Part shown: positions 126-63,112 of the stretch, piece by piece
Layout of the letters: every line of letters begins with the position of its first letter
Position numbering within the stretch: the first letter of the stretch is position 1
Assembly (NCBI GenBank): GCA_002269645.1
Contig: NIVC01002837.1
Coordinates: forward strand, 62,001-126,000
Length of the DNA: 64,000 nt
Direction: 5' to 3'
DNA from: Macrostomum lignano
Lineage: Eukaryota
Translations under genes and position numbers: made by a program
The notes under the pieces: generated by a model
Seen by the model: the letters and a program-made list of their open reading frames with translations, nothing else
Told to the model about the DNA's origin: nothing
Databases searched by the model: none

Positions 126-138
126 AGCCTCATTTATC
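126..138. repeat. Target-site duplication of LINE copy 1 (partner at 6033-6045)
   Basis: AGCCTCATTTATC is present exactly on both sides of the element. Confidence 0.9.
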
Positions 139-385
139 GCACGCGAAGGCGTATTCAGCATGCCAGTGAAGTATGAGACAGACTAGGCCCATGGGCTAAG
201 GTCTGCGATGCTTCACGCCTGCCCCTATCTTCAGCAGGTCAAGGCTGGTGGGAGGTCTACACCCTCTATTTGCCTCTGGCAGCCGCAGACCCCCCCCCAC
301 GCTGTCTCGCAAGTCGACCCAGGGTACTCGTCCCCGCGTGTGTTCAAGGCAGTCCCTAGGGCTGCTGGACAGACTGGGCTCCGGC
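139..385 (+). ncRNA. HDV-like self-cleaving ribozyme at the 5' end of the LINE
   Basis: P1 GCACGCG 139-145 / CGCGUGU 335-341 (G-U at the cleavage site). P3 GGG 322-324 / CCC 332-334. L3 UACUCGU 325-331. P1.1 AC 326-327 / GU 342-343. P4 344-369. J4/2 CAGA with C370. P2 313-321 / 375-385 (bulged). Cleavage site equals the TSD boundary. Confidence 0.85.
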
Positions 386-656
386 GCTGGCGACCCTATC
401 CAGTGGCTTCGGCCGAATTTGGGTATGCGGGTCTGGCTCGCCAACCTGCAGGCCGTGGTACTGCTCAACGTACTCTCTAATGCCTAAGGTGTTGACCGTG
501 CCGATGGGCTGGAAGGCCGGGGAGTAGTCCGGTCGCAAGCGGTCCCCCTCCTGGTGTCGGGCCAGCCTTGAGGGTGCTATTGGCCTACTGCCCGGTCAGG
601 TGGAGCGGCCGGGTGGGTACCGCGCCCCTTTGAGGGTAGCCCACCAACCTTCTATC

Positions 657-2207
657 ATGGCCTTCGAGCCGACTATGGATAAACAAGCTATTTCTAGGGA
701 TGGGGACCCTTCTAAACCCCAACCTCAGTCCGAAGGACCGGCCGGCCCTGCTGGCAGATCCCAACCGACTGATTCAACTGTGGCAAAGGAAGGACCGGCT
801 GGCTCTGCTGGCAGATCCGACCAGAGCTACCAAACTCAAAATACCCTAAGACCTGCCAGCTCCGCTGGTGGATCTAAGGGAACCGCGAGCTCTGAGCCTA
901 AAGGACCGGCCAAATCTGGCAGATCTGATGAAGCTCAGCGGGCTCGGCTTGAGCGCAAACGCGCTAAACAACGCGCCAAAAGGCAGGCCAAGAAGGGAGC
1001 TGCGGGGGCCAAAGCGGCGGCGTCCACCATGGATGCTGAAGCGACTGGAGTCCCAAGGCAACCAGGCGGGCCGGCCGGTGGAAGCTCCAGTAGTTCAGCG
1101 GCGGCGCTCCCTGGAGCTGCTGCCGCGGCTGCTGAGGCCGAAACCACGGCGCAACAAATGGCCACTGCCAACAAGGAGGTTCCTTCGGGAGCTACCTTTG
1201 CGGCGAAGGCCAAGGCCAAAATCCCGGGAGTGATCATCCAAGGTCGCGACCAGGACTGGACCACTGATCAGCTTCAAAAAGTGTGGAGTGCTGTTGACTC
1301 CTATCTGATTGAGCTGACTGTCGAGGAGGGAATCTCCATCGGCGTTGAGCGGATGGTGCTGCGAAGCACATTCGTTCTTATTGCTCCTAGCAGCGAGGAG
1401 GACGCTCGGCGGCTGCTCCAGCGGCTACCGACGGTCTCCTTGGATGCTGACCTTGGCGGAGCTCTTTTTCTTCGCGAGGGCCAGCGTCCAAAGACGATAC
1501 CCTATGTGGTTTTCGTCCCTGCTAAGAGCACCGCAGCTGGACCAGACGTTATTCGCCGGGTCCTACTGCGTCTGAACCCCGACCTCCCTGCTAGTGGACT
1601 GGTGTATCACCGTAAAGTCCGCAGGGGGGAGACGGGCAACTCAATTGTCCTCGGCCTTTCCAGCACTTGGGCGAGTCGGTACCCTAATGGATCCTCTTTC
1701 CAGCTGGGTGCCCTCAAGCTCAAGTTGCGCCGAGGAAAGTCTGCCAAAGGGAAGGCTACTGCCAACCCCGGCATCTCCGGCAAGAGCGGGGCGCAGTCTA
1801 AGGCCCAAGGAAAGGCGCAAGCCGATCCCAAAGCCAAAGCTGCATCTCGCCCCTCTGCTAGCAGCAGTTCGGCGACCGCGGTAACGGCTCCGGCCGAGCC
1901 CCGGGAACCAAACCTGCCAGTCGGAGAAGGAGTTGAGGACGAGGCCGGGTCTTCGGAATCCGAGCTCTCCTCGGCCACCTTGGTGGGGTCTGAAGGTAAA
2001 GATGCAGGTGAGGAAGCTTCCTCCATCCTGTCATCGGAGCCTGAGGACTCTGCTGGGGGGCCGGTGGGGGTGAGGAGGCCATGGACGTCGACCAACTCCC
2101 ATCTCCCAGTCAAGCCCCAGCGGCCTGGGACGAGGACGATCTGTTGTCCAAGTCTCCTTGATGGCCCTGGCTCTAGCCAGATATTGCATTTAATACAGTA
2201 TGACTAA
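657..2207 (+). CDS. LINE ORF1 (gag-like nucleic-acid chaperone, DUF4780-like); probable frameshift near 2055-2070
   Basis: ATG at 657 in the 600-2207 frame. Basic low-complexity N-terminus (RKRAKQRAKRQAKK). Central block YVVFVP...IRRVLLRLNPDLP...IVLGL...FQLGALKLKL resembles DUF4780 of LOA ORF1s (from recall). Acidic C-terminus. Confidence 0.8.
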   Translation: MAFEPTMDKQAISRDGDPSKPQPQSEGPAGPAGRSQPTDSTVAKEGPAGSAGRSDQSYQTQNTLRPASSAGGSKGTASSEPKGPAKSGRSDEAQRARLERKRAKQRAKRQAKKGAAGAKAAASTMDAEATGVPRQPGGPAGGSSSSSAAALPGAAAAAAEAETTAQQMATANKEVPSGATFAAKAKAKIPGVIIQGRDQDWTTDQLQKVWSAVDSYLIELTVEEGISIGVERMVLRSTFVLIAPSSEEDARRLLQRLPTVSLDADLGGALFLREGQRPKTIPYVVFVPAKSTAAGPDVIRRVLLRLNPDLPASGLVYHRKVRRGETGNSIVLGLSSTWASRYPNGSSFQLGALKLKLRRGKSAKGKATANPGISGKSGAQSKAQGKAQADPKAKAASRPSASSSSATAVTAPAEPREPNLPVGEGVEDEAGSSESELSSATLVGSEGKDAGEEASSILSSEPEDSAGGPVGVRRPWTSTNSHLPVKPQRPGTRTICCPSLLDGPGSSQILHLIQYD

Positions 2208-5200
2208 GCTCCACGCTGCCAAAGGAGCGACATTCTGTCTGCAAATAAATTTACAGCATTGCGTATCTGCGTCAGTAAATCTGATGAAGATTGCTGAGCT
2301 GTACAGGCCAGGCCTCATCCTGATCCAGGAACCCTGGATGCGCAACGGTAAGTTGCCCAACATTCCCTCTGGCTACTCTGATTTTTATGTGTGTGGCCCG
2401 GGGAACAGCCGCCCTAGAGCGGCTATCCTCGCTGCTAGCCATCTCCAGGCTTGGCTGAGGACTGATCTCTCTGATGGAGACCTTTGCGTCATCCAATCTA
2501 ATCATTTCTCTCCGCGTACGTGTCTTGTTGCCTCGGTTTATATCCCAGGCGACAGAGACCCTGCTCCCGAGAGTTTACTGCGCCTTGCGCAGTACTGCGA
2601 GTCCCAGAACGCTGAGCTGTGCTTAGGGGGCGACCTCAACGCGCACCACAAGCACTGGGGCAGCAAAGATACCAACACTAGAGGAGAGGAGCTTCTGGCC
2701 CTCATCTCTAACACAAACCTCATGCTCTGCAACCGCGGCAGCACTCCTACCTTTAATAATGGCAGATGGACCGAGGTCCTCGACGCCACACTCGTTACCC
2801 CAAGACTCTTTGACAGAGTCAAGGAGTGGAGAGTCTGGTCTGAGGAGCCCTCCCTGTCTGACCACTGCTTTATCGCCTTTAACATCGCGGACACTAAAAC
2901 CCAGTCTCCGATCACTTGGAGACGCAATATCCGCAACACTGATTGGGCGGCCTACAAGGCTGCCCTTGATCTGCACCTGCAGGAACTCACGGACTTACGT
3001 CCGATTGAGACCTGCGAGGATGTGGATCATATGGCTGAGACGCTGACAGGTTGCATTATTGCAGCCTACGAAGCGGCTTGTCCTGCTCGCGCCTACAGAG
3101 GCAAGACCTCGGCGCCGTGGTGGAACCCGGAGCTGGGGAAACTCAGGCGGAAGGCCAAAAGCCTTCATCGCCGTGCCATGAAGACCGGAAACCCGGAGGA
3201 CATGGAGCTTTTCCGGCAAGCCTCCCGCAATTTCAAATCTGAAGTGCGCAAGGCCAAGGAATGTAAGTGGCGCCAATTCTGCAATGAATTGGATCAAGAC
3301 AGACCTACTTCTAGGCTTGTCAAGGCCCTTACAATGGACAAAATGTCCAAATTAGCCATGATCAAAAAAGATGATGGCTCTCTTACTAAAGACCCTGAAG
3401 AAGTGCTTCAGCATATGCTTAGCACATTCTTCCCGAGGGTACCTACTGCTAGACCGGAGCCCAACCATTCGATGGATGGAGCCACCCTAGCGGCGGGCAT
3501 TGTCACTGAAGACCTAATCGCTCGTGCGGTCAGAACCTTCAAACCCTTCAAATCTCCTGGACCTGATGGTATCTACCCTGTTCTCCTTCGTGAAGCAGCC
3601 AAGATACCCTCGTTCCTGAGACTCACCCGCAATCTTATGCGGGCCTCTATCCAGCTGGGATACGTTCCCAAAAGCTGGACTGAAGCTCGAGTAGTCTTTA
3701 TTCCCAAACCTGGGAAGGGTGACTACCAAAGCGTCAAGGCCTTCCGGCCAATTAGCTTAACGTCAGCAATGCTTAAGCTCACTGAGAGGCTTATTCTCTG
3801 GCGGCTGCTCTCCTGCGAGCTGACAGCGATGCCCCTCAGCAATAATCAGCACGCCTTCCGTACCGGGAGGTCGACTGACAGCGCCCTGCATGCGATTGTC
3901 GAAAAGATTGAACGGGCGGTACTGGGTGACGGTTACGCCCTGGCTCTCTTTCTTGACATTGTTGGCGCCTTCGACAACGTTATCTTTGAAGCGTTTCAGA
4001 GGGCCCTTCAAAATCGCAAAGCTCATGCTACCCTCATACGGTGGATCATGTACATGATCTCCAACCGTACGGTCACTGCCCAACTTCTTGGGCAAACTGC
4101 CTCCACCAGAGTCTGTAAGGGTGGACCCCAAGGCGGAGTCCTCACCCCGACGCTCTGGAACCTGGTCATGGACGCTCTTCTGAGTGACTCCCGACCTGAC
4201 CCCGTCTTCAAAGTCGGGTATGCTGATGACGTCACGGCCATTGTGGCAGGACCGTCTCCCAGCACGCTCAGGGATCTGATGCAGAGCTTTATCCGCAAAG
4301 CAGAATCCTGGGCCAATGACAATGGTTTGGAACTCTCTGAGCCCAAAACCGTTGCCATTATGTTTACCAGCAGACTACGCTGGAACATACGTCCTCTGCA
4401 GCTCTACGGCAGAGATATTGCCTTCGCGCACCAGACCAGATGTCTCGGGGTCACACTTGACCACCGGCTCAACTGGTCCTTCCACGTGAAAGCAAAAGCT
4501 AAGCGTGCCTCAGCCATCCTGGCCCAGCTCCGACGAGCACTTGGCACTTCTTGGGGTCTATCCCCAAAGCGGCTTTGGTGGATCTATACTTCCGTAGTTA
4601 GACCTGCCATTACGTACGCCTCTGTTGTCTGGGTTAGCGCTACCCAGGTCAAAAGCCATGCAGACCTGCTCAACACGATCCAAGGCAGAGCGTGTAGGCT
4701 CATCTGCAACGCCACCAGGTCCACGCCCTTTGCTGGCATGGGGGCCTTTCTTAATCTTCCGCCTCTTGACCTCTTCATCAGGGGTGAGGCGGCTAGAACG
4801 ACGCGGCGTCTAATTGATGCCGGCGTCAAATTCATTTACATGAGAGCACCTGCTAAGCGGAACCTTGTCCCGCATAGCGATCTGTGCCTCAACTTTCTCA
4901 ACGAGTGTCAGGCCAATCGCGTCTTCACCGATGGCATTGCCTCAACGCTCAACCTGAGACAGCGCTACTCCGTAGCTATCGACTCGCGCGATAACATCAA
5001 TGACCATTGGAACCCTGGTGAGCTTCATTGCTACACCGACGGTTCTAAGCAGTCAGCCAACACCGGCTTTGGTGTTGGAATCTTTCTGAACGGGAGGGTC
5101 ATCGCTACCCACGCTCAATACACTGGGGTCAACTCCAGTGTTTTCCAAAATGAAGTTCTGGCCATCAGCTCCTGCACTGCAGAGCTTCTCGCCACTGGCG

Positions 5201-5940
5201 TTACTGGTAAGAACATCATTTTCCATTCGGACAGCCAAGCTGCCTTGCACGCCATCAGTGGCTGCAGCACCAACTCTGCTACAGTCCTTGACTGTATCAA
5301 ACTCCTCAATGTGTTGGGTTCCGCCAACAAAATTACCCTTAAGTGGGTTCCGGGGCATGTGGGGATCCGAGGAAATGAGTTGGCTGACACCCTTGCAAAA
5401 GTTGGTGCCTCCGGCTCCTCTCTCGGCCCCGAACCTCTTGTCCCGATTCCTGGCTGTGTCATCGACTCGCGCATCAAAGCGTGGATCAGGACTCAGCACC
5501 GCTCGACTTGGGCGAACCGCACGAACTGCAGGCAATCCAGAGGCGCTGTCCCTCAGCCCTCTCACCAGCTCCGGAAGCTCCTCTTGCGCCTCTCGCGCAG
5601 AGACATCCGGGCTGCCACCATGACCCTCTCTGGTCACGGCTGCTTCTCCAGGCACCAGTACCTGCAGGGCAACGCCACCAACGCCACCTGTAGTTTCTGC
5701 AACTCAGGTGACGAAACCGCTGAGCATTTCGTCAGCATCTGTCCCGCCTTCACGCGGGCCAGACTCACTTACCTCGGGCCACACACATCTATTACTGAAG
5801 CGTGCAAACCCGAAAACTTTAATCAGCTCATGCGCTACCTTCGGGCCACCCGCAGGGCTGAACTCTCCTTTCCAGAGAGCACCATAGCTGCTGGCGACAC
5901 TGGGGGACCTCCCTGGGCGGCGCCAACCCTCCGTCCATAG
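2200..5940 (+). CDS. LINE ORF2: AP endonuclease, reverse transcriptase, RNase H, C-terminal CCHC zinc finger (intact, 1246 aa)
   Basis: APE motifs QINLQH, IQEP, GDLNAHH, SDH. RT motifs KSPGPDG, FRPISL, LDIVGAFD, GPQGGVL, YADD, CLGVTLD. RNase H motifs YTDGS, QNEVLAI, SDSQAAL, WVPGH, GNELAD. Zinc finger CSFC...EHFVSIC. Confidence 0.97.
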   Translation: MTKLHAAKGATFCLQINLQHCVSASVNLMKIAELYRPGLILIQEPWMRNGKLPNIPSGYSDFYVCGPGNSRPRAAILAASHLQAWLRTDLSDGDLCVIQSNHFSPRTCLVASVYIPGDRDPAPESLLRLAQYCESQNAELCLGGDLNAHHKHWGSKDTNTRGEELLALISNTNLMLCNRGSTPTFNNGRWTEVLDATLVTPRLFDRVKEWRVWSEEPSLSDHCFIAFNIADTKTQSPITWRRNIRNTDWAAYKAALDLHLQELTDLRPIETCEDVDHMAETLTGCIIAAYEAACPARAYRGKTSAPWWNPELGKLRRKAKSLHRRAMKTGNPEDMELFRQASRNFKSEVRKAKECKWRQFCNELDQDRPTSRLVKALTMDKMSKLAMIKKDDGSLTKDPEEVLQHMLSTFFPRVPTARPEPNHSMDGATLAAGIVTEDLIARAVRTFKPFKSPGPDGIYPVLLREAAKIPSFLRLTRNLMRASIQLGYVPKSWTEARVVFIPKPGKGDYQSVKAFRPISLTSAMLKLTERLILWRLLSCELTAMPLSNNQHAFRTGRSTDSALHAIVEKIERAVLGDGYALALFLDIVGAFDNVIFEAFQRALQNRKAHATLIRWIMYMISNRTVTAQLLGQTASTRVCKGGPQGGVLTPTLWNLVMDALLSDSRPDPVFKVGYADDVTAIVAGPSPSTLRDLMQSFIRKAESWANDNGLELSEPKTVAIMFTSRLRWNIRPLQLYGRDIAFAHQTRCLGVTLDHRLNWSFHVKAKAKRASAILAQLRRALGTSWGLSPKRLWWIYTSVVRPAITYASVVWVSATQVKSHADLLNTIQGRACRLICNATRSTPFAGMGAFLNLPPLDLFIRGEAARTTRRLIDAGVKFIYMRAPAKRNLVPHSDLCLNFLNECQANRVFTDGIASTLNLRQRYSVAIDSRDNINDHWNPGELHCYTDGSKQSANTGFGVGIFLNGRVIATHAQYTGVNSSVFQNEVLAISSCTAELLATGVTGKNIIFHSDSQAALHAISGCSTNSATVLDCIKLLNVLGSANKITLKWVPGHVGIRGNELADTLAKVGASGSSLGPEPLVPIPGCVIDSRIKAWIRTQHRSTWANRTNCRQSRGAVPQPSHQLRKLLLRLSRRDIRAATMTLSGHGCFSRHQYLQGNATNATCSFCNSGDETAEHFVSICPAFTRARLTYLGPHTSITEACKPENFNQLMRYLRATRRAELSFPESTIAAGDTGGPPWAAPTLRP

Positions 5941-6254
5941 CGACGCGTCGGCCGTTCAGGGACTAGCGGAATGGGCGCCCGCGCCTTCCCGCTGTGTCCC
6001 CTCCGGGACAGCCCTGCAGCTAAGTCAAGTCAAGCCTCATTTATCTTCATCTGCAAGTCTGACTTCCGCTTCAAGCTTTGCTAGTTGTGTTCTCAAGCCG
6101 CTTGAAGAAAATGCTTGAGTTATGACTAGCTGGTTTTGGTTGGGACTCCGCTGGCATTGTCCTTGAACTGGGCCTGTGCAGTGCTTCGGTGTGTGTGCTT
6201 TGATTGTATTCAGATTAACTTACCCTCTCATAGCTAAAGAGAAGTGGAAATATT

Positions 6255-7090
6255 ATAGACCTCTGATAGATTTTGAGATGCATCCTCGATAGATTTGAGA
6301 TCGATCTCAGATAGATTTGAGATAGACCTCTGATAGATTTGAGATGGATTTCCGATAGATTTGAGATGGAACTCCAATAGATTTGAGATAGATCTCCGAT
6401 AGATTTGAGATAGATCCTCGATAGATTTGAGATAGATCTCTGATAGATTTGAGATGGATCTCCGATAGATTTGATATGGAACTCCAATAGATTTGAGATA
6501 GATCTCCGATAGATTTGAGATAGATCCTCGATAGATTTGAGATAGATCTCTGATAGATTTGAGATGGATCTCCGATAGATTTGAGATGGAACTCCAATAG
6601 ATTTGAGATAGATCTCCGATAGATTTGAGATAGATCCTCGATAGATTTGAGATAGATCTCCGATAGATTTGAGATAGACCTCTGATAGGTTTGAGATAGA
6701 TCTCTGATAGATTTGAGATAGACCTCTGATAGGTTTGAGATAGATCTCTGATAGATTTGAGATAGATCCTCGATAGATTTGAGATAGATCTCCGATAGAT
6801 TTGAGATAGACCTCTGATAGATTTGAGATAGACCTCTGATAGATTTGAGATAGATCTCCGATAGATTTGAGATAGATCTCCGATAGATTTGAGATAGATC
6901 TCCGATAGATTTGAGATAGATCCTCGATAGATTTGAGATAGAGCTCCGATACATTTGAGATAGACCACCGATAGATTTGAGATAGATCACCGATAGATTT
7001 GAGATAGATCTCCGATAGATTTGAGATAGATCTCCGATAGATTTAAGATAGATCTTCAATAGATTTCGACAGATTGGAGACAAATCTCAG
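6255..7090. repeat. 22-bp minisatellite GATAGATTTGAGATAGATCTCC
   Basis: Direct inspection; period 22. Confidence 0.95.
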
Positions 7091-7560
7091 ACAGATTCAG
7101 AACGATTTCTGTACGCAAACGCAACTAAAAGCAAACGATGGAGGAAGGAAAAGAGGAAGCAGACCAAAACAACAGCCGGTTGGTAAAGCATGTTTTCATA
7201 AACTGCCGGAATTCAACGGCAAACTGAGGTGGCCAGCGTCCGCCCCGACACGAACTGACTGACGATGCAGACCTGGGCTGTGTTTGTCCGTTAAATAACT
7301 CCCCCAAGGTCTGGCTGCCGCTGTCTCGCTTGCCTCGGGAAAAGTTTTCCGGGCGCCGCAGGAGGAAAAACAGGAGAGGGGATTTGCTGCCAAATGTGTC
7401 AGAGGCTGTTTCTGTTTGCGCCAGGCAAACAGGGAAATGTCCGCGAGGGGGTTTAGTGACTCTCCTGGGGGACTACAGTTTATGATGTCCGCCTGGCTGC
7501 GGCTCCGGAACCGGCTGTTCTTGAGTCTGCAGTCTAAATATCTAACTAATTAGAATTAAA

Positions 7561-8420
7561 TACCTGTCTGGCTGTTCGCCTGTCTGCCCGTCTACCTGTC
7601 TGCCTGTCTGTCTATCTACCTGTCTACCTGCCTGTCTTTCTACCTGTCTGCCTGGTTATCTACCTGTCTGCCTGTCTCCCTGTCTGTCTATCTACCTGCC
7701 TGTCTGTCTGTCTATCTAACTGTCTGCCTAGTTGTCTGCCTGCCTGCCTGCCCGTCTACCTGTCTGCCTGCCTGCCTGCCCGTCTACCTGTCTGCCTGTC
7801 TGTCTATCTACCTGCCTGTCTTTCTACCTGTCTGCCTGGTTATCTACCTGTCTGCCTGTCTCCCTGTCTGTCTATCTACCTGCCTGTCTGTCTGTCTATC
7901 TAACTGTCTGCCTAGTTGTCTGCCTGCCTGCCTGCCTGTCTACCTGTCTGCCTGTCTGTCTATCTACCTGCCTGTCTTTCTACCTGTCTGCCTGGTTATC
8001 TACCTGTCTGCCTGTCTCCCTGTCTGTCTATCTACCTGCCTGTCTGTCTGTCTATCTAACTGTCTGCCTAGTTGTCTGCCTGCCTGCCTGCCTGTCTACC
8101 TGTCTGCCTGTCTGTCTATCTACCTGCCTGTCTTTCTACCTGTCTGCCTGGTTATCTACCTGTCTGCCTGTCTCCCTGTCTGTCTATCTACCTGCCTGTC
8201 TGTCTGTCTATCTACCTGCCTGTCTCTCTGTCTATCTACCTGCCTGTCTGTCTGTCTATCTACCTGCCTGTCTGTCTGTCTATCTACCCGTCTGCCTAGT
8301 TATCTGCCTGCCTGCCTGTCTACCTGTCTGTCTATCTGCATATATTACCAGTCTATCTGTCTGCTCATCTGCCTGCCTATCTGTCTGTTCGCCTGTCTGC
8401 CTGTCTACCTTTCTGTTTAT
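7561..8420. repeat. CTGY/CTAT-based simple repeat with a 156-bp higher-order unit
   Basis: A 52-codon block recurs in the translated frame (~3-4 copies). Confidence 0.9.
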
Positions 8421-30474: not shown

Positions 30475-30872
30475 GTGAGTGAAACTTATTTAAAGTACAC
30501 TAATGGCACAGACGAAGCCAAGTACCAAATCATTGCGGGACTCTTAATTTAAATGCGGCACTTAGACATGCATTTTGCGAGAGTGCATGCGTGTCTGTGC
30601 GCGTGCATAAGCATTTACTCATACAGCCCGAGCTCCCTTGACTTCTTGTGCTGCACTTTTGCGACACAGCAGACTCCTCCTTCCTTATCCTTTTTCAGCT
30701 CCAGCACTGCTCTTCCTCAGAGCCTCTGCGTGATGGAGCAAGAAAAATAGCTGAATCCGGCCGGCGAAAAAACTGGGGGGCAATCCCTCCCTACCATTTC
30801 TCCCTGTGGCTCTACGTCCCTATTTCTCCCTACGATGGTACCATGGAATGTGCTGCTTGCTTATCTCAGGGT

Positions 30873-31450
<578 letters not shown>

Positions 31451-33984
31451 TACTAAAGACGCTGAGATAAATACGCTGAAAGACGACGGATACAAAGATA
31501 CATGTAGAGAAGCCTACGGAAAATTCCGTATAGACACAGAGACAGGTAAGTGAGCATGTGTACAGACAGATAGTTCCAACGAAAAATCGCACATCTCAAC
31601 TTTCAAAACCAGTTTGACCCGCTTGAGCAGGTGAAGTTTTTTCGAAACCTGAGAAGGACAAAGACGAGAAGTTGAGCATCAACTTTGCCAATAATAATCT
31701 TCACCGTCTGCAGCTTCCCCAAAGCCTTCAGCTCTCAATCGTGTCTTGACAAGGTCCCACCGAGGGTCCTACATGCATAATAAATAATATTTTGCCATTC
31801 TCGGGGTTGCCGCCAGGCCCCGCCCAGACCAAGCGAGAGTCCCACTTGTCCGCGCGCGCGCTGGTGGAGAGGCGGCCAGCTCTCGCTCGCCTGCCCCGGA
31901 AAGTTGACACCAGAATTCCCATCCGGAGTTGGGAAGCTGGCTTGAATTCTCATCCCGCGGGCTCGAAGCGAGCCAGCTTCGACTCTTCAACAGGCTTTGG
32001 ATGGCCTTCGCCCTCTCTTCTTTCAACAACAGCTCAGCGTCCAGAGCAGGGTCTCATGATGAGGCTAAGGGGATAGAGCGGCCCGAGCCGGAGGAGATGG
32101 GAGGTTGGATTCGGGGAGCTGACTCTCTGTCTGTCTGTCTGTCTGTCTCCCTACCATCTCGCTGGCCCCTTCCCTAGAGAGACAGGCAGAGACGAGAGCA
32201 GAAGACATGCGGTTTCGGAATCGCGGGGGGGGGTGGTTGCTGAAGGCTAAACTAGAAGGAAATAGAGGCTGGGCCGCAGGATGTTAGCGCGAGGCCGGCG
32301 CGCGTCCCGCGGTTTTTGGCGGAGCGGAGCTGGGAGGCCAATGGGCCAAACAGGCGTAGCTGGCAAGCGGTGGGATGAGGGCCAGATGACACACGTCAGT
32401 GCATCTGTATCTGTGCCTCACTCACTCACACACACACACGGACAAGCGCTCAGCTCCCCCCTTCTCATTCGTCGCTCGGCTTTTTTGTCCATCCAAGCCC
32501 GTGGGAAAGGCGACGTAAGCGACAGGGAAAAAAGCTGTCCCCAACAGCGCCGCCACCAAGCAGGCGCGAGAGCAAATTTGATGGAGGCAAGCGGCACGGC
32601 TGCGGGGGGAAGAGGAACTGCAACCATAGCTAAAAGGTGTTGCTTTTGCTAACCCGGGCACAGCCGGGACTGATAGACAGAGAAATCGAATCAAACCCCT
32701 TGCACAAGTGTGAGCAGATGATGATTGCATTTCCCAGCAGCTTTGATGAAGGAGAATGACGCAGAAGCTCTGCGATCTATAATGCTAGAAGCGAGCCACG
32801 GGAAATGGAAGGCACGGCACGGGAGGGGAAGAGGGAAGGGAAGTGACAGGGAAAAGTGTCATAAATCCACTGGGTCGAGCGGAAGTCGCCTCCCATCCGC
32901 GTGTCAGCTTCTGTGAGCAAGAATAATGCGGAGGAAGTCGCATCCGCGGCCGGCTCTGTTTGCTTTCAGTCAGAGTTGCTGCTGTTGCTTCCGCAGAATC
33001 TACAGGTGACTGCAGCGGCTCTATGAATAGGATCGATGCGACACATACTCGCAATAAGATTGACGACTTTGAAGAAATCATACTTTGATTCAAAGAGCTC
33101 TGAACCTTTTTACAACTGCAGGGAGCTTTTAAAAGTTCACAAAAAGGAGTTGCTACTACCGGTGACCGTGGCAGAGGCACTTTGTTTACATCAATAGAAT
33201 TCCCCAACCACTCATATAAGCTGCTGGGCTCGCCAGCAAAGATTCCCCATAATAGAATAGAAAATTCTTTCGTGGCCGTGGGACACAAACGGCGAACTCT
33301 TGGGAGTCCTGCTCAGAATAAAATAGGAAATGAGGGTGCGAGAAGAGATGGGGAGAATGACAGAAAAACCCAGGCGACAGCAGTAGTGTGATGAGGAAGA
33401 GGGAGGGGAGGCGCGACCACCCCTTCCCTGTCCGGGTGACTAAAAACCCCATTAAAAGCTGCGACACCCTTTGCTTGCGGGAACAGTGAAGAGATTTTGC
33501 TGCTGCTGCTGCTGCTGCTGAGGGGGCGGGGACTCACGCTGAACTTGAGCACCCCCTGTGCAGCATCGGCCTCTCTGTCTCTGCCTCTCGCTCCCTACTT
33601 GAGCAGCTTGCACCAGCCAAAATATATAGGCCAATGAACTCAAAGAGAGAGTAGTTTTCGAGTGGGCACGGCGGGGAGCACTCACAGTCGCGGAGAGAGG
33701 TGATCTCCCACACTCTTGTCAGCAATGTGCGCTCCCGACTTCTATTAGTTCTATACGTACTTCTTGTAAATTCCCAATTCTTACAATTGCCGAGGCTGTG
33801 GGCTTGCTGACACAAAGCTCATACGCTTCAAAAGCGTTTTTAGGATTGCATCGTTTATTAGTTCCAATTCTCTAAGACAGAAATAAAGAGGTAGGTTGCT
33901 TAATACACACTTTGAATGCGATAGTTTGAACAAAAACTAGGTCAAAGATCACTGTCCAGACTCTGTCTATTTTTAAAGGCTTGG

Positions 33985-41398: not shown

Positions 41399-41538
41399 GT
41401 GCCAGGTGGTTCATTCCCTGCGGCAGCTGTGGCGCCCCGGAGTTGTGCGCTTGGCGCCTCGCGCGCTGGTGGCACCCGGGCTGCCTGGCCGAGTTCCCGG
41501 CCACCGACTGGATGCGGAAGCGACTCGATGGAGTTCGG
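41399..41538 (+). CDS. CPED1: CPED1-like exon
   Basis: CACTCAG acceptor, GTCAGT donor; [29 protein letters not shown] resembles GQWIVPCLSC...CDW...WQP..C; phase 1 to 0. Confidence 0.85.
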
Positions 41539-41678
41539 GTCAGTTCGAGTCCGAGCGCGCGATTTACCTGGCTATGAAACTGTCAGGGAGCTTGTCATTG
41601 GAGAACAGGGCTTAGAGTCAGATGTTTTGGGTCAGCTGCTAAAGGATTAGGGGTCAGGAAGTCCGGGTTCATTACAGG

Positions 41679-43230
41679 AGTGTCAGTATGTCAGGAGTGT
41701 CAGTATGTCAGGAGTGTCAGTATGTCAGGAGTGTCAGTATGTCAGGAGTGTCAGTATGTCACGAGTGTCAGTATGTCAGTAGTGTCAGTATGTCAGGAGT
41801 GTCAGTATGTCAGTAGTGTCAGTATGTCAGGAGTGTCAGTATGTCAGGAGTGTCAGTATGTCAGGAGTGTCAGTATGTCAGTAGTGTCAGTATGTCAGGA
41901 GTGTCAGTATGTCAGGAGTGTCAGTATGTCAGGAGTGTCAGTATGTCAGTAGTGTCAGTATGTCAGTAGTGTCAGTATGTCAGTAGTGTCAGTATGTCAG
42001 GAGTGTCAGTATGTCAGGAGTGTCAGTATGTCAGGAGTGTCAGTATGTCAGGAGTGTCAGTATGTCAGGAGTGTCAGTATGTCAGTAGTGTCAGTATGTC
42101 AGGAGTGTCAGTATGTCAGGAGTGTCAGTATGTCAGTAGTGTCAGTATGTCAGGAGTGTCAGTATGTCAGGAGTGTCAGTATGTCACGAGTGTCAGTATG
42201 TCAGTAGTGTCAGTATGTCAGGAGTGTCAGTATGTCAGGAGTGTCAGTATGTCAGGAGTGTCAGTATGTCAGGAGTGTCAGTATGTCAGTAGTGTCAGTA
42301 TGTCAGTAGTGTCAGTATGTCAGGAGTGTCAGTATGTCAGGAGTGTCAGTATGTCAGGAGTGTCAGTATGTCAGTAGTGTCAGTATGTCAGTAGTGTCAG
42401 TGTGTCAGGAGTGTCAGTATGTCAGGAGTGTCAGTATGTCAGGAGTGTCAGTATGTCAGGAGTGTCAGTATGTCAGGAGTGTCAGTATGTCAGGAGTGTC
42501 AGTATGTCAGGAGTGTCAGTATGTCAGGAATGTCAGTATGTAAGTAGTGTCAGTATGTCAGTAGTGTCAGTATGTCAGGAGTGTCAGTATGTCAGGAGTG
42601 TCAGTATGTCAGGAGTGTCAGTATGTCAGGAGTGTCAGTATGTCAGGAGTGTCAGTATGTCAGGAGTGTCAGTATGTCAGGAGTGTCAGTATGTCAGGAG
42701 TGTCAGTATGTCAGGAGTGTCAGTATGTCAGGAGTGTCAGTATGTCAGGAGTGTCAGTATGTCAGGAGTGTCAGTATGTCAGGAGTGTCAGTATGTCAGG
42801 AGTGTCAGTATGTCAGGAGTGTCAGTATGTCAGGAGTGTCAGTATGTCAGGAGTGTCAGTATGTCAGGAGTGTCAGTATGTCAGGAGTGTCAGTATGTCA
42901 GGAGTGTCAGTATGTCAGGAGTGTCAGTATGTCAGGAGTGTCAGTATGTCAGGAGTGTCAGTATGTCAGGAGTGTCAGTATGTCAGGAGTGTCAGTATGT
43001 CAGGAGTGTCAGTATGTCAGGAGTGTCAGTATGTCAGGAGTGTCAGTATGTCAGGAGTGTCAGTATGTCAGTAGTGTCAGTATGTCAGGAGTGTCAGTAT
43101 GTCAGGAGTGTCAGTATGTCAGGAGTGTCAGTATGTCAGGAGTGTCAGTATGTCAGGAGTGTCAGTATGTCAGGAGTGTCAGTATGTAAGTAGTGTCAGT
43201 ATGTCAGTAGTGTCAGTATGTCAGTAGTGT
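41679..43230. repeat. 17-bp minisatellite GTCAGTATGTCAGGAGT, ~90 units
   Basis: Period 17. Confidence 0.97.
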
Positions 43231-56125: not shown

Positions 56126-56534
56126 CTCTACAGCACCCTATAAAATGTCTTAATACCACTAAAATGTGTCTGCACGAGCGGATACGGCGCCCAAAATGTG
56201 ATGACTCTCCAGCATCAGCTACCAGCAGCGCTCAGCATGGACTCTCGGTCCTGGCAAAAGGATTAAAACGTAGGGGATCGATCCGTGTTGGGGGTCGATT
56301 TCCAATTAGGCCAAGTCCCAGAGATAAAAGAAATACATTTTGGAGCCTTCTTTGAGCAAAGAGTAATCAATTTTTGGGGAAGATCAACTGACTGGATTAG
56401 AATTGAGGATTAGTGAAGCTGAGGCTCCGGGCGGCACATCATTCGATAGGCTGATGCTGATGGAGACTTTTGATGGAGAGCGTAGTTGCAATTTTCATCC
56501 GAATTTGCGTAATTGCCATGTATACCCATTGCCA

Positions 56535-56810
56535 TGCATGAGACTGCGCCCATAGAGCATGAGACTGCGCCCATAGAGCATGAGACTGCGCCCATAGAGC
56601 ATGAGACTGCGCCGATAGAGCATGAGACTGCGCCCATAGAGTATGAGACTGTATCCATAGAGTATGAGACTGTACCCATAGAGTATGAGACTGTACCCAT
56701 AGATCAGTATGAGACTGCACCCATAGAGTATGAGACTGTACCCATAGAGTATGAGGCTGTAACCATAGAGTATGAGGCTGCACCCATAGAGTATGAGACT
56801 GCACCCATAG
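56535..56810. repeat. 21-bp minisatellite CATAGAGTATGAGACTGCGCC
   Basis: Period 21. Confidence 0.9.
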
Positions 56811-57270
56811 AACAACAAGAGATTAAATCCAAGAGAGAATACCTAAGAGATGATACCCAATAGATAATACCTAAGGGACAGTACCCAAGAGACGATACAC
56901 AAGAGAGAATACCCAAGAAATAATTCTCAATTAAGAGACTGTTACCCATCAAAAGCTTTCTTCAAGGAAATGAACTAAAAAGATACCTTAGAGGTGCTGG
57001 ATCAGACACTGTAGCCTTCAAAAAAGTTACCCACCAGAAAATACCCATCGATGGTACTCCCAATGGAAGGTACACGCATAAGATGAAAGACTCGAACAAC
57101 AAGTACAGAATTTATATTAAAATTTCTTCAATAGTCGCATGTGTTTCTTTATTAATAGCAATTACAATAATTATCGAAACGTCACACTGCACCCCTCAGC
57201 TGATATCACATGTTCTCCATCAAAGTCAGTTCAGAAATGAGCAGCTGGATGAGGAGATCGGCTTCATCAC

Positions 57271-57678
57271 CCTCCGCATCGGGTAGGGCTTGCCATACCG
57301 GGTCTCCCTGGGCTGCGGCATCTGCCCGGAGTGCCTGCGGCGCCACTGCTCCGACGCCATCTTGAGCAGCCGGGCGCGTTCAACCGGGTCCAGTGAGGAC
57401 ACCTTCTTCTGCGCCTCGATTACGTACTCGGCGTCGGAGATCATCGAGCTGAGGTCCGAGCCGGCGGCTGAGTCAGCGCCGCTCTTCGGGCGCCGGTGTT
57501 CCGGCAGCTGGCTGAGCAGCAGGTCGTATAGCTGCAGCATCTCCCGCTTGCTGCTGATGAAGCTGTAGCTGGCGGGCAGGCAGCAGGGGAACCTGCCGCA
57601 GGGGGAGCCGTCGGAGCCAGCAAACTGGCAGCTGGGAGCCGGCTGCGGCTGCTGCTTCTGCTGTTGCTGTTGCTGCTT
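57271..57678 (-). CDS. Exon of an unidentified gene
   Basis: CTCTCCTTCCAG acceptor, GTGATG donor; 136 GC3-rich codons (KQQQ...CGRFPCCLP...AEYVIEAQKKVSSLDPVERARLL...GKPYPMRR); phase 0 to 0. Confidence 0.7.
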
Positions 57679-57711
57679 CTGGAAGGAGAGGAGCATGGCC
57701 AGTTAAAGACA

Positions 57712-58396
57712 CTGTGGCGCCCGATTTTAGAGAGTGGCGCCAAAGTTTAGACACTTGCGCCTAATTTGCGACAGTGGCGCCCGATTTTAGACAGTGGCGC
57801 CCAATTTTAGACTCTGGAACCCAATTTTAGACTCTGTGGCGCCCAATTTTAGACTCTGGCGCCCAATTTTAGACTCTGGCACCCAATTTTAGACTCAGTG
57901 GCGCCCAATTTTAGACTCTGTGGCGCCCAATTTTAGACTCTGTGGCGCCCAATTTTAGACTCTGTGGCGCCCAATTTTAGACTCTGTGGCGCCCAACTTT
58001 AGACTCTGTGGCGCCCAACTTTAGACTCTGGAACCCAATTTTAGACTCTGTGGCGCCCAATTTTAGACTCTGGCGCCCAATTTTAGACTCTGGCGCCCAA
58101 TTTTAGACTCTGGAACCCAATTTTAGACTCTGGCGCCCAATTTTAGACTATGGCGCCCAATTTTAGACTCTGGAACCCAATTTTAGACTCTGGCGCCCAA
58201 TTCTAGACTCTGGAACCCAATTTTAGACTCTGTGGCGCCCAATTTTAGACTCTGTGGCGCCCAATTTTAGACTCTGGCGCCCAATTTTAGACTCTGGCGC
58301 CCAATTTTAGACTCTGGCGCCCAATTTTAGACTCTGTGGCGCCCAATTTTAGACTCTGGGGCGCCCAATTTTAGACTCTGTGGCGCCCAATTTTAG
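57712..58396. repeat. 20/22-bp minisatellite TGGCGCCCAATTTTAGACTC(TG)
   Basis: Period 20-22. Confidence 0.95.
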
Positions 58397-58841
58397 GCTA
58401 TCAAATTATGATTTGTTTTTCATGCAAATTTTATGACCTTTGCTGCCAGGACGAGCTCAAACTCTCGGGGCTCCTCTTGGAGTTTTTTCCCATCGAAACC
58501 AAAATAGCCAATTGGATTTTTCCCAATAACAGTTTGTCAAGCAGCCACTGCCGTCAGAGCCCTGGGACCACTTGATCCCAGCGAGGGTTGCAGTGGAGGT
58601 TTTGATTACGTAATACTGGCTGCATTTTTATGAGCCATGAATTCATTCACATCTGAGACTTTGGCGAGTGGATCTCTAGCAAATCTAAAAATAATTTCTT
58701 ATATATCTAACAACGGTGTCTAACAGATCTAACAACTGTGTCTAACAGATCGAACAACGTTGTCTAACAGATCGAACAACGTTGTCTAACAGATCTAACA
58801 ACTGTGTCTAACAGATCTAACAACTGTGTCTAACAGATCTA

Positions 58842-61800: not shown

Positions 61801-63112
61801 CCCTCCGTCTGCTCCTTACGATGGCCTCAACGCCTTCCTCAACATTCCTCCGCTGGACATCTTTGTCCGCAGGGAAGCGGCTAAGACTGCCCGCCGTCTA
61901 GCTGACGCTGGCATTCGAATCCAGCCCCATAGGGCCATGGCTAAGCGCAAGCTTCTGCCCCACGCTGACCTCTGCCTCAAGGACTTGAGAGACAGCGGCG
62001 GGCTCCACGTCCTATCTGACGGCGAACCCCGCACTCTCAACCTCTTTCAGCGCTACAAGGTCACCATCCCCTCTAGGGATGCTGCCAATGACCACTGGAA
62101 TTTCCAGGAGGTCCATTGCTACACGGACGGATCCATCAAAGACGGTCGCGCCGGCTTTGGGGTCTGCATCATCATCAACGGCCGCGTAATTGCCACGCAT
62201 GCCCAGCACACTGGTAGACTCTCCACAGTCTTCCAGAACGAAGTCCTTGCCATCAGCTCTTGCGCTGCAGAGCTGAACGCCAAGGTTACGAGAGGAAAGA
62301 CTATTGTCATCCACTCCGACAGCCAAGCGGCCTTACAGGCCCTTTGCCACACCACAAGGAACTCCCGGACAGTCGCCGACTGCGCCCGGCAGCTCAACCT
62401 CCTGGCCAGAAGCAATACTGTCAGGCTGAAGTGGATCCCAGGGCACGCAGGGTTTCCGGGGAACGAGCTGGCAGACACCCTCGCCAAGAGGGGCGGCTCT
62501 GGCTCTTTCTTCGGCCCTGCCCCCCTGGTCCCTATGCCCTTGACAGTCATCAAACGTCAGATCGACGACTGGGCTGACTCCCTCCACAGGGACAGATGGG
62601 CGGGCACCCAAAACTGCCGGCAATCTCGTGCCGCGGTTCCTTGCCCGTCTCACAGACTCAGAAACATCCTTCTGAACCAGAATCGGAAGGATATTCGAGC
62701 CCTTGTCATGACCCTCACCGGCCATGGCTACCTCGCCAGGCACTGCTTCCTCCGAGGCGACCTCGAGAGCGAAATTTGCCCCTTTTGCGAGTGCGACAAT
62801 GAAGATGCTCAGCACTTTGTCTGTCACTGCCCTTTCTTTAACAGAGACCGGCTACGCTACCTCGGGCCGAACCCGTCCATTGACGAGGTCTGCCAGCCCG
62901 ACAGCATCCCACGGCTCATCCAGTTCCTTCGGGCGACTAGACGAGCCAGTTTCTTCCCAACGGAAGATCACGCTGCAGGACGGACCGGCGGACCACCCTG
63001 ACCGGCCCCACGCCTCTGCCTGTCTGCGGGCCTTCAGGGGCTAGCGGAATGGGCGACCCTCGCCTCCCCGCTGTGTCTACGGACCACCCTGCAGCTAAGT
63101 CAAGTAAGTCAA
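58842..63112 (+). mobile_element. 5'-truncated, disrupted LOA-like LINE (different subfamily from copy 1), antisense in an intron
   Basis: ORF1 3' fragment (58842-59296), ORF2 homologous to copy 1, same 3' UTR and TAAGTCAAG tail; ~165-187-bp flanking duplication. Confidence 0.95.
59299..63001 (+). pseudogene. Disrupted LINE ORF2 (APE-RT-RNase H-CCHC)
   Basis: Stops at 60061-60063 and 61521-61523 and 1-nt deletions near 60320 and 61810, judged by alignment to copy 1. YADD, YTDGS and CPFC...HFVCHC are retained. Confidence 0.9.

What the first reader, a model, noticed from the sequence alone, without database searches (positions are those of the whole stretch)
139..385. Complete HDV-like ribozyme whose cleavage site is exactly the first base of a full-length LOA-like LINE
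Seen: the element boundary, fixed independently by the 13-bp TSD, is G139. From G139 every element of the HDV double pseudoknot is present in order. P1 is GCACGCG/CGCGUGU with the canonical G-U wobble at +1. It is followed by a ~165-nt J1/2, P2 (313-321/375-385, two bulges), P3 GGG/CCC and a 7-nt L3 UACUCGU. P1.1 is a Watson-Crick AC/GU pair, a double compensatory variant of HDV CC/GG. P4 (GCAGUCC/GGGCUGC) and J4/2 C-A-G-A with putative catalytic C370 complete the fold. J1/2 is itself foldable (GUGAAG/CUUCAC, palindrome GCCCAUGGGC, GUCUGCG/CGCAGAC). Known: 5' HDV-like ribozymes release R2, L1Tc, RTE and some other non-LTR RNAs from read-through transcripts and can assist translation, and R2 ribozymes have long J1/2 inserts. 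I recall, but cannot verify here, a report for insect LOA-clade Baggins. Inference: this family self-processes its 5' end from host transcripts. A long-J1/2 AC/GU variant in a probable flatworm LOA-like family may be undescribed.
Basis: partly seen in the sequence, partly recalled or inferred. Interest (0 to 1): 0.9.

Follow-up and report, generated by a model that had tools for sequence, protein, structure and literature searches.

The report
HDV-like ribozyme heading a flatworm LINE
The first ~250 bases of a full-length jumping gene (a LINE retrotransposon, almost certainly from the flatworm Macrostomum lignano) fold into a hepatitis-delta-virus-type self-cutting RNA whose predicted cut site is exactly the element's first base; this trick is already known from other LINEs, so it is a new example and not a new mechanism.

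Summary
A perfect 13-bp target-site duplication (126-138 and 6033-6045) fixes the element at 139-6032. From G139 every part of the HDV-like double pseudoknot is present in the right order: P1, a long J1/2, P2, P3/L3, P1.1, P4 and a C in J4/2.

An HDV descriptor anchored at base 1 matched 4 of 40,000 dinucleotide shuffles.

A relative with 57% ORF2 identity (Logan contig L001) begins at the base homologous to G139. It has the same fold, with compensatory changes in P1, both P1.1 pairs and P2. P3 and the L3 active-site bases are unchanged.

More distant relatives (32-37% ORF2 identity; L002, L014, L023, L086) carry HDV-like folds 1.5-2.3 kb upstream of ORF2. L014 gives a weak hit to Rfam HDV-type models starting at the predicted cleavage base.

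Caveats:
- No Rfam model hits the window.
- In four of five relatives the catalytic C follows P4 as G-C-U (L023 is ambiguous); the window has two extra bases (G367-G368-A369-C370).
- Cleavage itself is untested, and the LOA assignment is untested.
- Long J1/2 inserts and 5'-end HDV-like ribozymes in R2, R4, Dong, Baggins, RTE and L1Tc are already published.

Verdict: a real feature, a new member of a known kind, of modest interest.

The parts
126..138 (+). Left copy of the 13-bp target-site duplication AGCCTCATTTATC
   Evidence: Exact repeat of 6033-6045, and the bases just outside differ.
139..145 (+). P1 5' strand (GCACGCG). The predicted cleavage is 5' of G139, which is also the first base of the element.
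   Evidence: Pairs over 7 bp with 335-341, with a G139-U341 wobble. L001 bases 1-6 are homologous and show compensatory changes at positions 3 and 4.
146..312 (+). J1/2 peripheral domain. It includes a conserved long hairpin at about 166-216 and a smaller hairpin at about 217-239.
   Evidence: RNAalifold consensus with L001 gives 34 pairs, 7 of them compensatory. The MFE fold recovers the same hairpins. Bases 171-211 are 88% identical to L001 33-73.
313..321 (+). P2 5' strand. CCCA at 318-321 lies next to P3, A317 sits in the internal loop, and GUCG at 313-316 is the distal part.
   Evidence: RNAduplex gives -15.3 kcal/mol with 375-393. L001 has the same layout: proximal stem, 1x3 loop, then a 4-bp distal stem.
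322..334 (+). P3 (GGG 322-324 with CCC 332-334) enclosing L3, UACUCGU at 325-331. A326 and C327 are the L3 side of P1.1.
   Evidence: Read from the sequence. L3 fits the HDV pattern U-NN-N-C-G-N. P3 is identical in L001 and L3 fits the same pattern there.
335..341 (+). P1 3' strand (CGCGUGU)
   Evidence: Lies directly 3' of P3, as the HDV topology requires, and pairs with 139-145.
342..343 (+). P1.1 3' side (G342 and U343, pairing with C327 and A326)
   Evidence: Both pairs are replaced by different Watson-Crick pairs in L001 (U181-A195 and C180-G196).
344..369 (+). J1.1/4 and P4. The core stem is 349-355 with 359-365 and a CUA loop. Possible extensions use 344-348 and 366-369.
   Evidence: Local fold of -15 kcal/mol, z = -2.4. 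The P4 sequence is quite different in L001 but is again a hairpin there, z = -4.4.
370..374 (+). J4/2 (CAGAC), with C370 as the candidate catalytic cytosine
   Evidence: First C after P4 and 5 nt before P2 3'. In four of five relatives C follows P4 as G-C-U; L023 is ambiguous (CACG under the descriptor fold). Here G368 and A369 intervene.
375..385 (+). P2 3' strand (UGGG 375-378, CUC loop, CGGC 382-385)
386..656 (+). Rest of the 5' UTR up to the ORF1 ATG. Several blocks are conserved with L001.
   Evidence: Alignment A1.
657..2207 (+). ORF1 (516 aa from the ATG; an in-frame GTG lies at 600)
   Evidence: The central domain is 39% identical to L001 ORF1. Partial matches at 98% identity to M. lignano UniRef entries.
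2200..5940 (+). ORF2, 1246 aa: AP endonuclease, reverse transcriptase, RNase H and a C-terminal Cys/His motif. It overlaps ORF1 by 8 nt in another frame.
   Evidence: Pfam hits to Exo_endo_phos(_2), RVT_1 and RNase_H. Homologues listed. Junction read.
5941..6032 (+). 3' UTR with a conserved block ending in ...CCCTGCAGCTAAGTCAAGTCA
   Evidence: Conserved in L001 and in the second copy in the window.
6033..6045 (+). Right copy of the target-site duplication

Best explanation
Bases 139 to about 385 encode an HDV-like (delta-type) self-cleaving ribozyme. It forms the 5' end of an intact, recently inserted non-LTR retrotransposon from Macrostomum lignano or a very close relative. The element encodes an AP endonuclease, a reverse transcriptase and an RNase H.

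Proposed mechanism:
1. The element is transcribed as part of a longer RNA that starts upstream.
2. The RNA folds into the nested double pseudoknot. P1 is 139-145 with 335-341. P2 is 313-321 with 375-385. P3 is 322-324 with 332-334. P1.1 is 326-327 with 342-343. P4 lies within 344-369.
3. The 170-nt structured J1/2 domain probably holds P1 and P2 together.
4. A cytosine in J4/2 (C370) catalyses scission 5' of G139. This releases an element RNA that begins exactly at base 1 with a 5'-OH.
5. Target-primed reverse transcription of that RNA gives full-length copies. Their first base abuts the target-site duplication, as seen here.

What is shown: the boundary, the fold, its statistical excess over chance, and its conservation by covariation. 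What is inferred from published HDV-like ribozymes: catalysis, co-transcription with host sequence, and any help with translation.
For: - The TSD places the element start at G139.
- Every HDV element is present in the canonical order, with the L3 bases that correspond to the HDV active site (U325, C329, G330).
- The anchored descriptor is rare in shuffles: 39 of 4000 for the loose version and 4 of 40,000 for the tight one.
- L001 (57% ORF2 identity) starts at the homologous G. It has P1 GCCUGC/GCAGGC, with A-U changed to C-G and C-G changed to U-A. Both P1.1 pairs are changed compensatorily. P2 is CUCAGA/UCUGAG, P3 is unchanged, P4 is a different hairpin, and a C follows P4.
- Its own anchored test gave 6 of 40,000 shuffles.
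- In a manual six-sequence segment alignment, 98.5% of cells are paired and 21 of 22 pairs change on both sides. Slid-partner controls give 36-44%.
- Distant relatives L002/L053, L014, L023 and L086 have HDV-like folds 1.5-2.3 kb upstream of ORF2 on the coding strand.
- L014 848-968 matches Rfam HDV-F-prausnitzii over the full model (25.7 bits) and drz-agam-1 (20.4 bits). Both hits start at the predicted cleavage base.
- Conserved P3/L3/P1.1 with compensatory changes in P1 is the published pattern for Drosophila R2 ribozymes (PMC3774820). Here P3/L3 is conserved while P1.1 and P1 covary. Cleavage at the element's 5' end is published for R4, Dong, Baggins and L1Tc (PMC3774820).
Against: - No Rfam family reaches its threshold in the window. 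No HDV-type model appears for bases 1-800 even at E<=10. The 170-nt J1/2 insert plausibly explains this, but that was not tested.
- In L001, L002, L014 and L086 the catalytic C follows P4 as G-C-U (L023 is ambiguous). The window reads G367-G368-A369-C370-A371, so the active-site spacing is atypical and this copy could be slow or dead.
- The P2 stem next to P3 is only 4 bp.
- The pseudoknot-free MFE of 139-395 is no more stable than shuffles (z = -0.76) and does not contain P1.
- Only one close relative with a 5' end could be obtained. The distant examples were found with a pairing-based descriptor or by eye, so their pair counts are partly circular.
- Several other relatives with 5' regions show no recognisable ribozyme.
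- There are no cleavage data.
Confidence: 0.8

Rival explanations
1. The 5' UTR keeps an HDV-like architecture, but in this family or this copy it no longer cuts. The precise 5' end at G139 then comes from an internal RNA polymerase II promoter that starts transcription at base 1, as in many LINEs. The fold serves RNA stability, protein binding or translation.
For: - Two extra bases (G368, A369) stand before C370, compared with G-C-U in four of the five relatives.
- The P2 stem next to P3 is only 4 bp.
- The best-conserved sequence block between the window and L001 lies in the J1/2 hairpin (171-211, 88% identity), not in the catalytic core. That is what a promoter or protein-binding site would look like.
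- In L1Tc the same 77 nt act as both promoter and ribozyme (PMC3383444), so a promoter role is plausible.
Against: - P1 and P1.1 have no known role other than forming the cleavage site, yet they are maintained by compensatory changes.
- The L3 active-site bases are intact.
- A promoter role and a ribozyme role do not exclude each other.
Confidence: 0.13
2. The fold is a chance resemblance in a GC-rich 5' UTR, with no HDV-like structure under selection.
For: - The region is GC-rich and offers many alternative pairings. The MFE fold omits P1 and is no better than shuffles.
- No Rfam hit.
- The loose descriptor matches about 1% of shuffles.
Against: - The tight anchored descriptor matched 4 of 40,000 shuffles for the window and 6 of 40,000 for L001.
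- Compensatory changes are seen in P1, P1.1 and P2.
- The P1 start coincides exactly with the TSD boundary and with the start of the L001 contig.
- The fold recurs in distant relatives, one of which gives a weak Rfam HDV-type hit.
Confidence: 0.03

Closest known systems
HDV-like ribozymes at the 5' end of non-LTR retrotransposons that cleave at the element's first base (Baggins1 of Drosophila, R4, Dong, L1Tc, RTE; Ruminski et al. 2011 as cited in PMC6765202; PMC3774820; PMC3185411)
   Same: - A nested double pseudoknot sits at the very 5' end, and the cleavage site is the first base of the element.
- The element has no fixed insertion site and is flanked by a TSD (as for L1Tc, Baggins and RTE).
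- The presumed role is release from a read-through transcript.
   Different: - The host is a free-living flatworm, and I found no paper that describes this.
- J1/2 is about 170 nt and structured, whereas L1Tc fits the whole ribozyme into 77 nt.
- One P1.1 pair is A-U.
- Two extra bases precede the candidate catalytic C.
- Membership of the LOA clade, to which Baggins belongs, was not tested.
R2 element ribozymes (Drosophila, silkmoths, the planarian Schmidtea mediterranea and others; PMC3774820)
   Same: - HDV-like fold.
- Conserved P3 and L3 with compensatory variation in P1.
- Very long J1/2 loops (216-498 nt in silkmoths).
- A flatworm example exists (Schmidtea R2).
   Different: - R2 has a restriction-enzyme-like endonuclease and inserts only into 28S rDNA.
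- R2 often cleaves upstream, inside the 28S sequence.
- This element has an AP endonuclease, RNase H and two ORFs, and its target here does not look like rDNA.
Large HDV-like ribozymes with a structured J1/2 (P1.2) domain, such as drz-Agam-2 (PMC4908430)
   Same: A stable base-paired J1/2 domain lies between P1 and P2. Relative L002 also has a 12-bp P2, like Agam-2.
   Different: - J1/2 here is longer and has several hairpins.
- In the window P2 is interrupted (4 bp, a loop, then 4 bp).
- No kinetic data exist.
Twister-variant ribozymes at the 5' end of Perere-3 (RTE) in Schistosoma mansoni (PMC8501958)
   Same: A flatworm LINE with an AP endonuclease has a 5' self-cleaving ribozyme whose cleavage site abuts the TSD. 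The same reasoning from TSD to cleavage site is used there.
   Different: The ribozyme class differs (twister against HDV-like). In Perere-3 the P1 5' strand comes from the TSD, whereas here all of P1 lies inside the element.

Membership tests
HDV-like (delta) self-cleaving ribozymes | Nested double pseudoknot with strands in the order P1, J1/2, P2, P3, L3, P3', P1', P1.1, P4, J4/2, P2' | tested here: met
   All strands are present in this order at 139-385. The same order is found in L001.
HDV-like (delta) self-cleaving ribozymes | P1 of 6-7 bp that begins at the cleavage site with G+1, usually as a G-U wobble | tested here: met
   P1 is 7 bp with a G139-U341 wobble. L001 and L002 have G-C at this position. 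The 6-7 bp range is taken from PMC4908430.
HDV-like (delta) self-cleaving ribozymes | A 3-bp P3 closing a 7-8-nt L3 that carries the active-site U...C-G (HDV U20, C24, G25; the numbering is from my own knowledge) | tested here: met
   GGG / UACUCGU / CCC in the window, and UCUCCGU in L001.
HDV-like (delta) self-cleaving ribozymes | P1.1: one or two pairs between L3 positions 2-3 and the bases directly 3' of P1 | tested here: met
   A326-U343 and C327-G342. Both pairs are changed compensatorily in L001, to C180-G196 and U181-A195.
HDV-like (delta) self-cleaving ribozymes | Catalytic cytosine at the start of J4/2, directly 3' of P4 | tested here: inconclusive
   C370 is available if P4 is extended by pairs involving G368 and A369. 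In L001, L002, L014 and L086 the C follows a G right after P4 (L023 is ambiguous), and the equivalent base in the window is G368.
HDV-like (delta) self-cleaving ribozymes | A match to a curated covariance model (Rfam HDV_ribozyme, CPEB3, drz-agam, HDV-F-prausnitzii and others) | tested here: not met
   No hit at gathering threshold in the whole window, and none at E<=10 in bases 1-800. The compact relative L014 scores 25.7 bits against a gathering score of 44. These models expect a short J1/2.
HDV-like (delta) self-cleaving ribozymes | Mg2+-dependent self-scission that gives a 5'-OH and a 2',3'-cyclic phosphate | not testable with these tools
   This needs an in vitro transcription and cleavage assay.
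Non-LTR retrotransposons processed by a 5' ribozyme | The cleavage site coincides with the element's 5' boundary | tested here: met
   The TSD ends at 138 and P1 starts at 139.
Non-LTR retrotransposons processed by a 5' ribozyme | Independent full-length copies all begin at the same base | tested here: inconclusive
   Only one further 5' end was obtained. The L001 contig starts at the homologous G. The other copy in the window is 5'-truncated. The exact-protein look-up found no other copy.
LOA clade of non-LTR retrotransposons | ORF2 with AP endonuclease, reverse transcriptase and RNase H, plus a separate ORF1 | tested here: met
   Pfam domains. This architecture is shared with the I, Tad1, Ingi and other clades, so it does not discriminate.
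LOA clade of non-LTR retrotransposons | The reverse transcriptase groups with reference LOA elements (LOA, Baggins, Lian, Bilbo) in a phylogeny | not tested
   No named reference sequences could be obtained with the tools, and none of the homologues carried a clade name.

The most novel reading that the evidence does not exclude
The 5' module may be more than a standard HDV-like ribozyme. The J1/2 hairpin is the most sequence-conserved part of the 5' UTR between relatives whose ORF2 proteins are only 57% identical. It could be a second functional element, either an internal promoter or a binding site for the element's own proteins, embedded inside the ribozyme. That would be a dual promoter-ribozyme unit like Pr77/L1TcRz of trypanosomes, but built differently. 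Separately, the Macrostomum lineage may tolerate a shifted active site, with two extra bases before the catalytic C and an A-U pair in P1.1. That would widen the known sequence space of this ribozyme class.
Probability: 0.2. Interest if true: 0.5.

Novelty: new member of a known kind. Interest (0 to 1): 0.3.

Why it matters
- It adds a free-living flatworm LINE family to the list of retrotransposons that appear to cut their own 5' end with an HDV-like ribozyme. Fold matches in distant, mostly metagenome-derived relatives suggest that the device is scattered through a large clade of RNase H-bearing LINEs.
- For Macrostomum lignano, a regeneration and transgenesis model with a repeat-rich genome, it gives a precise marker for full-length copies of this family.
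- If the ribozyme is active, it is a natural cis-cleaving RNA that works in this animal.
- The mechanism is not new. 5' HDV-like ribozymes, long structured J1/2 domains and TSD-adjacent cleavage sites are all published.

Tried and rejected
- **Rfam on the window.** There were no hits at gathering threshold. In E-value mode on bases 1-800 there were only two irrelevant weak hits.
- **Exact-protein look-up of ORF2.** This was meant to find identical copies elsewhere, but none is on record.
- **ORF1 homologue searches.** The full ORF1 returned only three chimeric M. lignano UniRef gene models with no DNA. An alignment of the conserved ORF1 domain returned nothing. Both were attempts to reach more 5' ends.
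- **P0001.** This relative (56% identity) has no retrievable DNA and its contig lacks the 5' end. The contig of P0004 (L085) also lacks the 5' UTR.
- **Scan for the conserved J1/2 block GGCCCANGGGCTAAGGTCT.** It gave three chance matches in bacterial genomes and none in viral contigs.
- **MAFFT alignment of ribozyme cores.** MAFFT misaligned them. For pair counting I therefore joined manually extracted helix segments with artificial spacers.
- **Covariance model from L002 alone.** It found only itself and is too sequence-specific to be useful.
- **TSDs around the distant relatives.** They could not be established from the contigs held.
- **Other relatives.** L011, related to L014, shows no alignable ribozyme region. 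L087, L088 and L089 show no convincing ribozyme by descriptor or by Rfam.
- **Pseudoknot-free folding.** The MFE fold of the whole region does not recover P1 and is no more stable than shuffles, so it says nothing useful about a pseudoknotted ribozyme.
- **Ruminski et al. 2011.** The paper is not held in the library, so Baggins is cited through PMC6765202 and PMC3774820.
- **Alternative catalytic cytosines.** C365, C374 and C379-382 were considered and rejected because they do not leave P2 stacked on P3.

Full report
**Boundaries and coding capacity**

The sequence AGCCTCATTTATC occurs at 126-138 and again at 6033-6045, and the bases just outside the two copies differ. The element is therefore 139-6032.

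- ORF1 runs 657-2207.
- ORF2 runs 2200-5940 and overlaps ORF1 by 8 nt in another frame.
- ORF2 has AP-endonuclease, reverse-transcriptase and RNase H domains.
- The 3' UTR ends in ...GCTAAGTCAAGTCA.

Both ORFs are intact and the duplication is perfect, so this is a young insertion.

Parts of ORF1 and ORF2 are 96-98% identical to Macrostomum lignano UniRef entries, which are chimeric gene models. The window therefore comes from that flatworm or a very close relative.

**The fold in the window**

| Element | Position | Comment |
|---|---|---|
| P1 | 139-145 with 335-341 | 7 bp, G139-U341 wobble at the cleavage site |
| P3 | 322-324 with 332-334 | GGG/CCC |
| L3 | 325-331 | UACUCGU; fits the HDV pattern U-NN-N-C-G-N |
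| P1.1 | A326-U343, C327-G342 | two Watson-Crick pairs |
| P4 | core 349-355 with 359-365 | can be extended by bases in 344-348 and 366-369 |
| J4/2 | C370-C374 | CAGAC, 5 nt |
| P2 | 318-321 with 375-378, then 313-316 with 382-385 | 4 bp, a 1x3 internal loop, then 4 bp |
| J1/2 | 146 to 312 or 317 | 167-172 nt, contains a long hairpin at about 166-216 |

**Is it more than chance?**

I wrote an HDV descriptor with these requirements:
- P1 of 6-7 bp;
- P3 of 3 Watson-Crick pairs;
- L3 of 6-8 nt;
- both P1.1 pairs;
- a P4 hairpin;
- a C followed by 3-5 nt;
- P2 of at least 4 bp next to P3.

Anchored at base 1 of the element, it matched 39 of 4000 dinucleotide shuffles of the 5' region. Adding the known L3 active-site pattern reduced this to 4 of 40,000.

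Run unanchored over both strands of the 64-kb window, the tight descriptor found this core and only two other poor candidates. One lies in a repeat array near 7.3 kb and one is antisense inside ORF2.

**Comparative evidence from a close relative**

The window holds one other related LINE, at about 58.8-63.1 kb with about 65% nucleotide identity. It is 5'-truncated and degraded, so it says nothing about the 5' end.

The closest relative for which DNA could be fetched has 57% ORF2 identity. It lies on a 6.5-kb Logan contig, L001.

That contig begins exactly at the base that aligns with G139, and it has the same fold.

| Element | L001 | Change relative to the window |
|---|---|---|
| P1 | GCCUGC (1-6) with GCAGGC (189-194) | position 3: A-U to C-G; position 4: C-G to U-A; position 1: G-U to G-C; the seventh pair is lost |
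| P3 | GGG/CCC | unchanged |
| L3 | UCUCCGU | same U...CG pattern |
| P1.1 | C180-G196, U181-A195 | both pairs changed on both sides |
| P2 | CUCAGA/UCUGAG, then a 1x3 loop, then GCCG/CGGC | same interrupted layout, with two double changes in the proximal stem |
| P4 | unrelated sequence | still a strong hairpin (z = -4.4) |
| Catalytic C | C228 | directly follows the base of P4 |

The P1 and P1.1 positions in L001 are fixed by homology: the 5' terminus on one side and the conserved P3/L3 hairpin on the other. These compensatory changes are therefore not a by-product of searching for pairs.

The anchored tight descriptor matched 6 of 40,000 shuffles of L001.

In Drosophila R2 ribozymes the P3/L3/P1.1 core is conserved and P1 covaries (PMC3774820). 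Here P3/L3 is conserved while both P1.1 and P1 covary.

**Distant relatives**

A scan of JGI metagenome contigs with an ORF2 alignment returned 80 loci at 28-40% identity. Further contigs came from protein look-ups.

On the coding strand, 1.5-2.3 kb upstream of ORF2 (where a 5' end should lie), HDV-like folds were found in four independent loci:
- L002, which is the same locus as L053. It has a 12-bp P2 and J1/2 of about 130 nt.
- L014, which is compact, with a J1/2 of only a few nucleotides (about 7).
- L023.
- L086, found by eye, which has an atypical 16-nt L3.

L014 848-968 aligns over the full length of Rfam HDV-F-prausnitzii (25.7 bits, gathering score 44, E = 0.56). It also matches drz-agam-1 (20.4 bits). 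Both hits start at the base I had predicted as the cleavage site.

In a manual alignment of helix segments from the six sequences, 98.5% of cells are paired and 21 of 22 pairs show changes on both sides. With the partners slid by one to three columns the figure is 36-44%. For the four distant sequences this count is partly circular, because pairing was a criterion for finding them.

Many other relatives with upstream sequence show no recognisable ribozyme. The device is therefore scattered in the clade, or too diverged to detect, and it is not universal.

**Weak points**

- No Rfam model detects the window. The 170-nt J1/2 insert is a reasonable cause, but I could not test a version with the insert removed.
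- In L001, L002, L014 and L086, as in HDV itself (from my own knowledge), the catalytic C follows P4 as G-C-U; L023 is ambiguous (CACG under the descriptor fold). The window reads G367-G368-A369-C370-A371. Either G368 and A369 extend P4 by pairing with U344/C345, which leaves C370 at the helix end as in ribozymes without a J1.1/4 linker, or this copy has a displaced active site.
- The P2 stem next to P3 is short.
- The pseudoknot-free MFE neither contains P1 nor beats shuffles. That is expected for a pseudoknot in GC-rich RNA, but it gives no support.
- No other copy of this exact family could be obtained, so the pile-up of 5' junctions could not be tested.

**Mechanism**

The best-supported reading has these steps:
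1. Read-through transcription from upstream.
2. Folding, helped by the structured J1/2. Such peripheral domains accelerate large HDV-like ribozymes by bringing P1 and P2 together (PMC4908430).
3. Cleavage 5' of G139.
4. Reverse transcription of an RNA that begins at base 1, which explains why the TSD abuts P1.

The same TSD argument was used for twister variants in Schistosoma Perere-3 (PMC8501958).

An internal promoter that starts transcription at G139 cannot be excluded. It could coexist with the ribozyme, as in L1Tc (PMC3383444). The strongly conserved J1/2 hairpin is a candidate for such a second function.

**Comparison with what is known**

- HDV-like ribozymes at element 5' ends are published for R2, R4, Dong, Baggins, L1Tc and RTE (PMC3774820, PMC6765202, PMC3185411).
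- J1/2 loops of 216-498 nt are known in silkmoth R2 (PMC3774820).
- A planarian R2 ribozyme has been predicted (PMC3774820).
- I found no paper that links Macrostomum, or a flatworm LINE with an AP endonuclease, to an HDV-like ribozyme.
- Whether the element belongs to the LOA clade was not tested. The domain order is shared by several clades.

**Verdict**

This is a real and well-supported HDV-like ribozyme fold at the exact 5' end of an intact LINE. It is a new member of a known kind, and catalysis is inferred, not shown. Interest is modest (0.3).

Noticed in passing
window 58840-63105 (+): A second, related LINE copy with about 65% nucleotide identity to the main element. It is 5'-truncated within ORF1, its ORF2 is broken into several ORFs, and it shares the conserved 3' UTR and the AAGTCAAGT-type tail.
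   Followed up: partly
window 5960-6032; L001 5870-5965; window 63029-63105: A conserved 3' UTR block (CAGGG.CTAGCGGAATGGGCG...CGCC..CCGCTG...CCCTGCAGCTAAGTCAA) is shared by three family members that are otherwise 57-65% identical. It is probably the 3' recognition structure for the reverse transcriptase.
   Followed up: partly
window 166-216 (within J1/2); L001 28-78: This hairpin is the best-conserved sequence in the whole 5' UTR (171-211 is 88% identical to L001), more so than the ribozyme helices. It may be a promoter or a protein-binding element inside the ribozyme.
   Followed up: partly
window 142-151; L001 2-15: A small 5'-terminal hairpin overlaps the P1 5' strand (window CGC-GAAG-GCG; L001 CCUGC-AAUG-GCAGG). 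It would compete with P1 and could be an alternative, inactive conformation.
   Followed up: no
L001 1 and 5965-6492: The Logan contig starts exactly at the predicted cleavage base but runs about 530 nt past the element's 3' end into flanking sequence. If the run is RNA-seq, that asymmetry would fit 5' processing or initiation at base 1. I could not look up the type of run.
   Followed up: no
window 41522-43100: A large tandem array with a 17-bp period and about 93 copies.
   Followed up: no
window 6230-6900; 56520-56810; 57700-58400; 58690-58840: Several minisatellite arrays lie next to the two LINE copies. Their units resemble GATAGATTTGAGATAGATCTCC, CATAGAGCATGAGACTGCGCC, GGCGCCCAATTTTAGACTCT and GTCTAACAGATCTAACAACT.
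   Followed up: no
window 7556-8336 and 30867-31457: Arms of about 580 nt that are 78% complementary and lie 22.6 kb apart. Many shifted registers match, so these are probably two oppositely oriented arrays of the same short repeat.
   Followed up: no
L087 927-2582, L088 759-1916, L089 1619-3400: ORF1 of distant relatives hits Pfam DUF4780 (PF16012). ORF1 of the window element has no Pfam hit at E<=0.01.
   Followed up: no
window 57226-57696 (-): A GC-rich 156-aa ORF on the minus strand lies between two repeat arrays. It was not examined.
   Followed up: no
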